A stretch of 64,000 nt of DNA from NCBI RefSeq assembly GCF_040938485.1, contig NW_027271266.1, positions 434,001 to 498,000 on the forward strand, in the 5' to 3' direction. The notes beneath the pieces were generated by a model. The model was given only the letters and a program-made list of their open reading frames with translations. It searched no databases and was not told where the DNA came from. The translations under genes and the position numbers were made by a program. The stretch comes from Diadema antillarum. Its lineage: Eukaryota. Below, in pieces: positions 8,171 through 9,493 of the stretch (positions are counted from its first letter, which is position 1; the number at the start of each line of letters is the position of its first letter).

Positions 8171-9493
8171 TTTTATACCCCCGCCAAACGAAGTTTGAAG
8201 GGGGTATATAGGAATCAGCGGACGGTCGGGCGGTCGGTCGGGGGGTTGGTCGGGCGGTCGGGCGGTCGGTCGGGCGGTCGGGCGGTCGGTCCGTTGCAAA
8301 TCTTGCGTCGCGAACTACTTCCTCAGTTTTCAACCGATTCCCATAAAACTTGGCACAGATGTGTGCCTTGGGTTGTAGATGTGCAAGACGTATTTTTTGA
8401 CAGTACCCAAAAGTACGTTGCCATGGTAACGGTATATTATGGGCAAAAATGGGTACAAATCTTGCGTCGCGAACTCCTCCCACAGTTTTTGATCAATTTT
8501 TATGAAAGTAGGTACAGATGTTCATCTGAATATGTTAATGTGCAAGACACATATTTCCGCAGTGGCAAAAAGTGCGTTGCCATGGTAACGGCATGTTATT
8601 GGTAAAATATAGGGCAAAATGCTTCATGGCAAAACTGCTTCATCAGTGTGCTTCCAATTCTCATGGAATTCATATTGAATGTTTGTCTTAGGATATAGGT
8701 CAGCATGACACATTTCTTGACAGTGACAAAAAGTATGTTGCCATGGTAACAGCTCACATATTATGAGCCAAAATGATGGAAAATTTTTTGTTGCAAACTA
8801 CTTCCTCAGTTTTTGCCCAATTTCCATGAAACTTGGTACAGATGTGTGCCTTTGGTTGTAGATGTGCAAGACACATTTTTTGACAGTACCCGAAAGTACG
8901 TTGCCATGGTAACGGCATATTAATGGCAGAAGATCAAGGAAAGATCTTGCGGATTTAACTACTTCCTCAGTTTTTTGACCAAAGCTTACGAAATGTGGCA
9001 CACACCTTGATCTTGGTGGGAAGATGTGGAAGACATATTTTTCGGACGTGTCGGAAGCTGTGTTGCCATGGTAACGGCATATAAATGGCAGAAGATGAAG
9101 GAAAGATCTTGCGGATTGAACTACTTCCTCTGTATTCGACTGAAGCTCATGAAATGTGGCACACACATTGGTCTTGGTGGGAAGATGTGCAAGACATATT
9201 TTTTGGACATGTTGGAAGCTGCGTTGCCATGGTAACGGCATATTAATGGTGGAAGATCAAGGAAAGATCTTGTGGATTGAACTACTTCCTCAGTTTTTGA
9301 CAAAAGCTTATGAAATGTGGCACACACAATAGTCTTGGTGGGAAGATGTGCAAGACATATTTTTCGGACGTGTCGGAAGCTGCGTTGCCATGGTAACGGC
9401 ATTTAAATGGCAGAAGATCAAGGAAAGATCATTCCTTGGGTAAGACTGTCGTCACGGGGCGGGGGTATTAATCACCTTAAGTGATATTTCTAG
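8171..9493 (+). mobile_element. Helentron-associated non-autonomous element (DINE-1/HINE-like) with internal tandem array of about 161 bp
   Basis: The 5' end is a T-run followed by subterminal ATACCCCCGCC (8175-8185), a nearby inverted copy GGGGGTAT (8200-8207) and a (CGGT/CGGG)n microsatellite. The 3' end has subterminal inverted GGCGGGGGTAT (9458-9468), hairpin ATCAC-CTTAA-GTGAT (9471-9485) and terminal CTAG followed by TT. This is the diagnostic DINE/HINE layout. Confidence 0.8.
8417..9397. promoter_or_regulatory. array of seven RFX X-box-type motifs GTTGCCATGGTAAC
   Basis: Identical 14-mers at 8417, 8576, 8737, 8900, 9062, 9223 and 9384. They fit the GTNRCC(N0-3)RGYAAC X-box consensus. 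Function is not shown. Confidence 0.55.

What the first reader, a model, noticed from the sequence alone, without database searches (positions are those of the whole stretch)
8417..9397. Helentron-type element carrying seven invariant RFX X-boxes: possible mobile ciliary-gene enhancer
Seen: GTTGCCATGGTAAC occurs unchanged at 8417, 8576, 8737, 8900, 9062, 9223 and 9384, while the surrounding repeat units diverge markedly (unit 3 near 8660-8735 barely resembles unit 1 outside the motif). Established: the sequence fits the RFX X-box consensus GTNRCC(N0-3)RGYAAC, RFX factors drive ciliary gene programmes, and DINE/HINE elements have been co-opted as carriers of transcription-factor sites in other animals. 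Inference: the motif is under constraint, either for the element's own replication or expression (e.g. in ciliated or germline cells) or as a homotypic RFX cluster dispersed by rolling-circle transposition. A tubulin-modifying gene (MATCAP) lies about 30 kb away and the unidentified + gene about 4 kb away.
Basis: partly seen in the sequence, partly recalled or inferred. Interest (0 to 1): 0.7.

Follow-up and report, generated by a model that had tools for sequence, protein, structure and literature searches.

The report
Jumping element carrying RFX-site arrays
This is one of several thousand near-identical copies of a gene-less rolling-circle (Helentron-type) jumping element whose ~161-base internal repeats each keep a perfect binding site for RFX, the cilia-gene regulator. 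The site looks preserved for the element's own spread, and nothing shows this copy switches on a nearby cilia gene.

Summary
GTTGCCATGGTAAC occurs exactly seven times (8417 to 9384, ~161-bp period) and is the only long invariant block among units that are otherwise 51-67% identical.

The stretch 8170-9495 is a complete 1.32-kb non-autonomous Helentron (HINE/DINE-1-like). It has subterminal inverted repeats, a 5' hairpin, a GGTC-type microsatellite, 7.3 central repeats, a 3' palindrome and a CTAG end. Paralogous empty sites show it inserted into a T-run without target duplication. It is nested in another 2-kb repeat.

The family is very young and abundant: at least 2,171 candidates, about 98% identical. 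An older sibling family (at least 3,397 candidates) carries 12-13 units, each with the same box or its perfect-palindrome form. The assembly holds 27,591 exact boxes; reversed controls gave 0-3.

Across 15 diverged unit types the box is by far the most conserved block. Private substitutions in 27 independent young copies hit the box at the neutral rate (7 observed, 7.3 expected). So constraint acts on propagating element lineages, not on inserted copies.

The box equals the classical palindromic RFX site, and RFX genes are present. Hijacking of host RFX by the element is my preferred but untested mechanism. The "ciliary-gene enhancer" reading of this copy is not supported.

The parts
8170..9495 (+). 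Complete non-autonomous Helentron (HINE) copy, 'family A'. The net insertion is 1321 bp into a run of five T; two terminal T cannot be assigned to either end.
   Evidence: Copies with unrelated flanks align to query 31-1356 at ~98%. Three paralogous empty sites read gacattttt|aaattt.
8174..8185 (+). 5' subterminal inverted repeat TATACCCCCGCC
   Evidence: Pairs with 9458-9471, 93% complementary (I23).
8193..8208 (+). Inner inverted repeat (IR) that pairs with the 5' subTIR to form the 5' hairpin 8174-8208
   Evidence: I17. ssDNA fold -11.2 kcal/mol, z = -4.3.
8218..8291 (+). Microsatellite of (GGTC/GGGC)n type, the GTCK class
   Evidence: TRF periods 4-20. Length varies between copies. Cg_HINE elements carry the same class of microsatellite (PMC7492417).
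8292..9440 (+). Central tandem array. Units: u1 8292-8430, u2 8431-8589, u3 8590-8750, u4 8751-8913, u5 8914-9075, u6 9076-9236, u7 9237-9397, partial u8 9398-~9440.
8417..8430 (+). X-box 1
8576..8589 (+). X-box 2
8737..8750 (+). X-box 3
8900..8913 (+). X-box 4
9062..9075 (+). X-box 5
9223..9236 (+). X-box 6
9384..9397 (+). X-box 7
9458..9471 (+). 3' subterminal inverted repeat GGCGGGGGTATTAA
   Evidence: I23
9471..9485 (+). 3' palindrome ATCAC-CTTAA-GTGAT (5-bp stem), followed by the terminal CTAG at 9490-9493
   Evidence: weak stem, -3.1 kcal/mol. Conserved in the copies.
6735..8169 (.). Left part of the ~2.0-kb host repeat into which the HINE inserted
   Evidence: At least 405 candidates, 94-98% identical. 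Uninterrupted in L060-L062.
9496..10067 (.). Right part of the same host repeat

Best explanation
SHOWN. Window 8170-9495 is an intact copy of a very young, high-copy non-autonomous Helentron (HINE, DINE-1-like), nested in another interspersed repeat. Each of its ~161-bp central repeat units carries the sequence GTTGCCATGGTAAC. The box is retained in every diverged unit type of this family and of an older sibling family, while the rest of the unit has drifted to about 54% identity. Individual inserted copies lose the box at the neutral rate. Selection therefore acts on the lineages of source elements that keep transposing, not on the copies left behind.

INFERRED. The box is most likely read on double-stranded DNA by host RFX dimers. 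A phased array of optimal sites would keep source copies accessible or transcribed in RFX-active cells, such as male germ cells building a flagellum or the ciliated early embryo. That would raise their chance of being mobilised in trans by a RepHel protein and inherited. Seeding about 27,600 perfect X-boxes across the assembly would be a by-product. Some copies may since have been co-opted, but nothing shows that this one has.
For: HINE anatomy. Empty sites, T-run insertion, no TSD. No Pfam-matching ORF and no Rfam match. Copy number and youth: (at least 2,171 candidates, top 40 at ~98%). Sibling family B has a homologous left flank, microsatellite and first unit, and 12-13 boxed units. Box conservation across 15 unit types: mean major-base frequency 0.967 against 0.65-0.71 elsewhere, permutation p < 5e-5. 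Neutral post-insertion decay: private substitutions at specified positions 7 observed against 7.3 expected, CpG-aware. Genome counts 22,640 + 4,951 against 0-3 for reversed controls. [quoted passage not shown] RFX DNA-binding-domain genes are present. The box is a poor ssDNA hairpin, which fits a duplex-DNA dimer site. Intact RepHel ORFs are abundant.
Against: The invariant AT spacer and CCATGG core would also suit another dimeric protein. The autonomous partner was not identified. The commonest RepHel family has no X-box, HINE unit or HINE left flank in the 1.4 kb upstream of its ATG. Neither box form occurs near its two copies on contig C1. So the box is not a general requirement of the local rolling-circle machinery. 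Family B rests on three copies, because more could not be fetched. The neutral-decay test cannot exclude weak constraint of less than about 50%.
Confidence: 0.5

Rival explanations
1. Host-exapted enhancer. This copy, or the family as a whole, serves as a homotypic RFX cluster that drives ciliary genes such as the nearby MATCAP-like gene.
For: Perfect X-boxes in a phased array. RFX genes present. TE-borne transcription-factor sites are often co-opted (general knowledge).
Against: Private substitutions hit the box at the neutral rate in 27 independent copies; 80% constraint is excluded at p ~ 0.001. The copy lies inside another repeat. Exact boxes occur about once per 64 kb of assembly, so a cilia-related gene within 30 kb is expected by chance fairly often. 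The family is ~0.5% diverged from its consensus, too young to show conservation.
Confidence: 0.07
2. The box is the binding site of an element-encoded protein or another host protein, not RFX. Candidates include a DNA-binding part of the very long RepHel polyprotein. It would be needed for mobilisation, copy choice, or array expansion and maintenance.
For: Conservation operates at the level of element lineages. The spacer AT, which the RFX consensus leaves free, is as invariant between lineages as the half-sites. The Cg_HINE authors discuss motif-directed cut-and-replace of monomers by transposase-related proteins (PMC7492417).
Against: The 14-mer is exactly the optimal RFX site, including part of the flanking C/G preference (PMC3414849, PMC5449588). 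The commonest autonomous family carries no such box. Oyster HINE arrays lack it, so it is not a general Helentron signal. It is a weak ssDNA hairpin, unlike typical HUH-nuclease signals.
Confidence: 0.2
3. The units derive from a satellite DNA whose monomers carry a conserved protein-binding box, analogous to the CENP-B box. The HINE merely captured and spreads them, and the constraint belongs to the satellite.
For: HINE central repeats and classical satellites interconvert in oysters and Drosophila (PMC7492417). Periods of 147-165 bp are satellite-like.
Against: All arrays seen here are short (3-13 units) and lie inside HINE flanks with a fixed orientation. Unit 1 starts at the same microsatellite junction in both families, which argues for long co-evolution with the element. 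No long array was seen, although assemblies under-represent them.
Confidence: 0.1
4. No function. The block is kept by a mutational or recombinational bias, such as a gene-conversion tract or unequal-exchange hotspot centred on the palindrome, or by chance.
For: Tandem repeats undergo homogenisation. Units 5-7 are recent duplicates.
Against: Homogenisation would not be confined to 14 bp while the flanks drift to ~54% identity across two families. Column-permutation p < 5e-5. The box decays normally in dead copies, so there is no intrinsic mutational protection.
Confidence: 0.08

Closest known systems
Cg_HINE elements of Crassostrea gigas, and the related pearl, DTC84 and MgE elements of bivalves (PMC7492417)
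   Same: Same module order: 5' subTIR, complementary IR, GTCK-type microsatellite, short array of 140-180-bp satellite-like repeats in fixed orientation, 3' subTIR, palindrome. Both insert at TT or T-rich sites without TSD, and both are often nested in other TEs.
   Different: No sequence similarity was tested or seen. No X-box occurs in the oyster array sequences held as supplement (the file was cut when stored). The oyster paper notes only two 'relatively conserved segments' between some clusters and does not link them to a transcription factor.
DINE-1 / HINE families of Drosophila, mites and mosquitoes (Thomas et al. 2014, PMC4067079)
   Same: Defining termini: subTIR 2-4 nt from the 5' end, 3' subTIR about 38 nt from the 3' end, a palindrome 8-35 nt from the end, terminal T residues that belong to the element, and insertion within TT.
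   Different: In those species autonomous partners with the same ends were found. Here the partner is unresolved. No TF-site array has been reported for those families.
Tsp elements of Strongylocentrotus purpuratus (Cohen et al. 1985, cited in PMC4067079 as sea-urchin DINE-1-like elements)
   Same: Sea-urchin DINE-1-like mobile sequences, so possibly the same superfamily in the same animal class.
   Different: The paper could not be read, so no comparison of sequence or repeats was made.
TE families that disperse transcription-factor sites, for example MER41 with STAT1, B2 SINE with CTCF, LTR10/MER61 with p53 (own knowledge)
   Same: A mobile element carries a strong site for a host factor and seeds thousands of copies.
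   Different: Here the sites form a phased homotypic array inside a rolling-circle element's tandem repeats. The evidence points to benefit for the element, not to host co-option.
CENP-B box in alpha satellite (own knowledge)
   Same: One short protein-binding box kept in otherwise drifting ~170-bp tandem units.
   Different: That box lies in megabase centromeric arrays and is bound by a domesticated transposase. These arrays are short, dispersed and TE-borne.
EF-C/RFX1 sites in the hepatitis B virus and polyomavirus enhancers (own knowledge)
   Same: A selfish genetic element uses a palindromic RFX site as a cis-element.
   Different: Those are single sites in viral enhancers, with binding demonstrated. 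Here binding is untested.

Membership tests
HINE / DINE-1-like non-autonomous Helentron | 11-15-bp subterminal inverted repeats, 2-4 nt from the 5' end and ~38-60 nt from the 3' end | tested here: met
   8174-8185 pairs with 9458-9471, 93% complementary. The ends were fixed by copies and empty sites.
HINE / DINE-1-like non-autonomous Helentron | Short IR just inside the 5' subTIR that pairs with it | tested here: met
   8193-8208. Hairpin -11.2 kcal/mol, z = -4.3.
HINE / DINE-1-like non-autonomous Helentron | Microsatellite followed by central tandem repeats in fixed orientation | tested here: met
   Same order and orientation in families A and B.
HINE / DINE-1-like non-autonomous Helentron | Palindrome or stem-loop between the 3' subTIR and the 3' end | tested here: met
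   9471-9485, a 5-bp stem conserved in the copies. It is thermodynamically weak (z = -1.5).
HINE / DINE-1-like non-autonomous Helentron | Insertion into TT or a T-run without target-site duplication | tested here: met
   Twenty-seven copies have unrelated flanks ending in T and starting with TT. Three empty sites were found.
HINE / DINE-1-like non-autonomous Helentron | No coding capacity | tested here: met
   Only repeat-borne ORFs of 147 aa or less. The three longest (136-147 aa) have no Pfam match.
HINE / DINE-1-like non-autonomous Helentron | Autonomous Helentron partner sharing the termini | tested here: inconclusive
   There are 146 Rep-domain matches and intact ORFs of ~3,400-3,800 aa with OTU, DUF6570 and Rep domains. 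The 5' region reached shows no HINE left flank. The 3' ends and the endonuclease domain were not reached.
Functional RFX X-box | Match to GTNRCC-N(0-3)-RGYAAC and closeness to the palindromic optimum | tested here: met
   PMC3414849, PMC5449588.
Functional RFX X-box | RFX DNA-binding-domain proteins encoded by the genome | tested here: met
   Nineteen exon-level matches to PF02257 at about six loci plus haplotig duplicates.
Functional RFX X-box | Bound by RFX in vitro or in vivo | not testable with these tools
   Needs EMSA, CUT&Tag or ChIP.
Functional RFX X-box | Promoter-proximal position at a ciliary gene | tested here: not met
   The array lies inside a 2-kb interspersed repeat. No gene start was identified next to it.
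Exapted TE-derived enhancer | Purifying selection on the sites after insertion | tested here: not met
   Private substitutions 7 observed against 7.3 expected at specified positions, and 11 against 8.8 for the whole box.
Exapted TE-derived enhancer | Enrichment near target genes, open chromatin, reporter activity | not testable with these tools
   No annotation or functional data were available.

The most novel reading that the evidence does not exclude
Rolling-circle HINE lineages of this sea urchin are selected to carry phased arrays of optimal RFX sites. A transposon would then be hijacking the ancient cilia/flagella regulator to be active in sperm-forming or early embryonic cells. Its ~27,600 perfect sites would form a genome-wide RFX sink and a reservoir from which ciliary regulation can be rewired.
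Probability: 0.3. Interest if true: 0.7.

Novelty: new variant of a known kind. Interest (0 to 1): 0.45.

Why it matters
HINEs with satellite-like central repeats are known, but what keeps those repeats in the element is an open question in the Helentron and satellite-DNA literature. Here the repeats have one clear invariant: an optimal site for a deeply conserved transcription factor. The data also separate two levels of selection, with constraint on propagating lineages and none on dead copies.

If RFX binds, this gives a concrete function for HINE central repeats. It would also be an example of a DNA transposon exploiting a germline/cilia regulator. The tens of thousands of strong sites would matter for RFX dosage and for cis-regulatory evolution in echinoderms. 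All of this is directly testable in sea-urchin embryos and testis.

For this particular window the practical message is modest. It holds an ordinary member of a huge family, not a demonstrated enhancer.

Tried and rejected
- **Other units in the window.** An nhmmer profile of the units found no other related unit in the 64-kb window. The near-matches at 16317, 30632, 30749 and 54974 lie in unrelated sequence.
- **Locus flanks.** One weak unit-profile hit in L030 looked uninformative.
- **Known RNA or coding sequence.** No Rfam match at E <= 1. The three longest ORFs have no Pfam match.
- **ssDNA hairpin signal.** The box folds weakly as single-stranded DNA (-2.4 kcal/mol, z = -0.4). I rejected this as the main reading.
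- **First decay test.** The naive test ignored that box positions 1 and 14 are CpG and that half of all differences are shared subfamily variants. A CpG-aware count without the private/shared split gave an apparent 2.3-fold deficit (p = 0.01). That deficit vanished once only private substitutions were used. Shared-variant columns: 0 in the box against 2.7 expected, not significant.
- **Autonomous partner.** I walked about 6 kb upstream from the Rep domain of the commonest RepHel family to its ATG and 1.4 kb beyond. No X-box, unit or HINE flank was found. The partner remains unresolved.
- **Family B.** Only three copies are in hand. Their box shows 6 variable sites of 168 against 14.6% elsewhere. 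With so few copies, and unit-number differences that disturb the alignment, lineage divergence and post-insertion constraint cannot be separated.
- **Literature.** No paper holds the 14-mer. No link between RFX sites and HINE or satellite repeats was found. One Xenopus Helitron locus lies under rfx2/foxj1 ChIP peaks (PMC12001565), which is anecdotal. The Tsp paper is not held.
- **Species.** The name Diadema antillarum comes only from other agents' notes and was not checked here.

Full report
**1. Observation**

GTTGCCATGGTAAC occurs exactly at 8417, 8576, 8737, 8900, 9062, 9223 and 9384. Shuffled windows give 0.44 matches even when two mismatches are allowed. Tandem Repeats Finder sees only the last 3.5 units as a 161-bp array, because the first four are too diverged. 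In the unit alignment the 14-mer is the only long invariant run. Fourteen consecutive invariant columns have a column-permutation p of 5e-5. Outside the box the units are 51-67% identical. Units 5-7 are recent duplicates and units 1 and 4 are close, so this copy holds about four independent unit lineages.

**2. What the stretch is**

A search of the window's own assembly (1.75 Gb) with 8140-9500 gave at least 2,171 candidates. All 40 scored matches were full-length at about 98% identity over query 31-1356, which is window 8170-9495. The flanks of 27 independent copies are unrelated. Left flanks end in T and right flanks begin with TT.

The parts, in order:
- 5' subTIR at 8174-8185
- a complementary IR at 8193-8208, which forms a strong hairpin (-11.2 kcal/mol, z = -4.3)
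- a GGTC/GGGC microsatellite at 8218-8291
- 7.3 central units at 8292-9440
- 3' subTIR at 9458-9471
- a 5-bp-stem palindrome at 9471-9485
- a terminal CTAG at 9490-9493

The element sits inside a roughly 2.0-kb repeat (window 6735-8169 plus 9496-10067) that has at least 405 candidate copies. Three uninterrupted paralogues read straight across the site. They show a net insertion of 1321 bp into a run of five T with no target duplication.

No Rfam family matches. ORFs are 147 aa or shorter, and the three longest have no Pfam match.

This is point for point the HINE/DINE-1 anatomy described for mites, flies and oysters (PMC4067079, PMC7492417).

The one defining feature not met is an identified autonomous partner. 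The assembly does contain many intact Helitron-like genes. There are 146 Rep-domain matches and open frames of about 3,400-3,800 aa, with two OTU protease domains, DUF6570 and the Rep domain. I walked one family about 6 kb upstream to its ATG and 1.4 kb beyond. That stretch held no HINE flank, no unit and no X-box. On contig C1, neither box form occurs anywhere near the two copies of that family.

**3. The box beyond this copy**

The assembly holds 22,640 exact copies of the window's 14-mer and 4,951 of the perfect palindrome GTTGCCATGGCAAC. The reversed control patterns gave 0-3. Most listed places form runs spaced 146-167 bp apart.

Loci fetched through the palindrome revealed a sibling family, B, with at least 3,397 candidates at 87-96% identity. 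It has a homologous left flank and the same microsatellite. Its first-unit junction is also the same. It carries 12-13 units: the first four or five bear the perfect palindrome and the rest bear the window's form.

Units of families A and B are only about 54% identical outside the box. In an alignment of 15 unit types (clusters at 85% identity), the box has a mean major-base frequency of 0.967 against 0.65-0.71 elsewhere. The next best 14-column window reaches 0.83. The permutation p is below 5e-5.

Three variants are fixed in lineages:
- T/C at position 11, the Y of RGYAAC
- G/A at position 4, the R of GTNRCC
- one G>T at position 4, which breaks the consensus in one half-site

About half of the first 50 listed perfect palindromes are singletons in other contexts. 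I did not resolve these.

**4. At which level does constraint act?**

Among 27 independent family-A copies (three assembly duplicates removed), 90 differences from the consensus are private and 83 are shared subfamily variants. CpG sites change about 5-6 times faster than other sites, and box positions 1 and 14 are usually CpG.

With CpG status taken into account, private substitutions at the eleven positions the RFX consensus specifies number 7 against 7.3 expected. For the whole box the figures are 11 against 8.8. The box's ratio lies in the upper part of the distribution over all 160 phases of the unit.

Strong constraint (80%) on inserted copies is excluded at p of about 0.001. Constraint of 50% is only marginally excluded, at p of about 0.08.

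No shared variant lies in the box (0 columns against 2.7 expected), which is not significant.

The picture is therefore deep conservation between unit and family lineages, with neutral decay once a copy is inserted. That is the signature of selection on the element's ability to propagate, not of host co-option.

The three family-B copies show a four-fold deficit of variable sites in the box. With three copies, lineage divergence cannot be separated from post-insertion constraint, and more copies could not be fetched.

**5. Mechanism**

[quoted passage not shown] The human RFX4 SELEX consensus, CGTTGCCATGGCAACG, also fits the prevalent flanking C and G (PMC5449588). RFX DNA-binding-domain genes are present. 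As single-stranded DNA the box is a poor hairpin, which fits a duplex-DNA dimer site better than an HUH-nuclease signal. Oyster HINE arrays held as supplement lack the box, so it is not a general Helentron signal.

My preferred reading, which is inference, is that host RFX dimers bind the array and keep source copies accessible or transcribed in RFX-active cells. Male germ cells and the ciliated early embryo are the obvious ones for heritable transposition. This would favour mobilisation in trans.

The rivals are:
- a different reader of the box, either element-encoded or another host protein
- a box inherited from a satellite DNA
- a recombinational bias
- host exaptation

Exact boxes occur about once per 64 kb of assembly, so a tubulin-modifying gene 30 kb away is not evidence.

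**6. Comparison and novelty**

By structure the element is a member of the HINE kind. Carrying transcription-factor sites is a known theme for transposons. What I did not find in the searchable literature is any HINE or Helentron whose central repeats are anchored on a conserved transcription-factor site, or any RFX-site-bearing repeat family. One Xenopus Helitron locus under rfx2/foxj1 ChIP peaks is the nearest hint. I rate it a new variant of a known kind. Its interest is moderate: the mechanism is untested and this particular copy is ordinary.

Other first-stage notes on this genome independently flag the same family in other windows. They add no independent evidence. The species name Diadema antillarum comes from those notes and was not verified here.

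Noticed in passing
L001/L002 (C378 vs C121), L012/L013 (C596 vs C112), L016/L017 (both on C9): These pairs of loci are identical including their flanks, which suggests uncollapsed haplotigs or segmental duplicates in the assembly. Copy counts for the assembly therefore overstate haploid numbers.
   Followed up: partly
27 family-A copies (L001-L030): CpG positions differ from the consensus about 5-6 times more often than other positions (2.65% vs 0.43% overall; private changes 1.05% vs 0.22%). This suggests germline methylation of these repeats.
   Followed up: partly
L049, L052, L054 (C361:2083430-2090020, minus strand); L055, L056 (C1882:35103-39902): A very abundant, apparently intact autonomous Helitron-like family with open frames of ~3,400-3,800 aa. 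It has two OTU protease domains, a Herpes_teg_N-like region, DUF6570, the Rep domain, and a coding 54-bp (18-aa) tandem repeat upstream of Rep. Dozens of copies are 99-100% identical.
   Followed up: partly
window 6735-8169 and 9496-10067: A ~2.0-kb interspersed repeat hosts the HINE. It has at least 405 candidate copies at 94-98% identity and internal inverted repeats (7791-7866 with 9699-9774; 8021-8051 with 9535-9565). Its class was not determined.
   Followed up: partly
L041 (G000:C2:329046-332059), position 1501: A single perfect palindromic X-box lies two bases upstream of a TGACGTC (CRE-like) site in non-repetitive-looking sequence. It may be a genuine promoter X-box.
   Followed up: no
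L035/L036 (C1:724955-728133) and L043 (C2:906138-909151): Perfect X-boxes sit next to (AAAGGTC)n-type microsatellites. In L035 two boxes are 165 bp apart with no detectable similarity between the intervening sequences.
   Followed up: no
L042 (C2:363794-366807): A single perfect X-box lies between two inverted 23-bp G/C-run segments (742-764 and 1637-1659). It may belong to a different small transposon.
   Followed up: no
Places listed (contigs C1, C2): Family-A-like arrays occur with 3, 4, 5 and 7 boxes. The spacings (159, 161, 163, then 162, 161, 161) suggest subfamilies that differ in unit number, for example units 1-4 only.
   Followed up: no
window 16317-16330: An isolated one-mismatch X-box-like site (GTTGCCATGGTAAT) lies in unrelated sequence.
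   Followed up: partly
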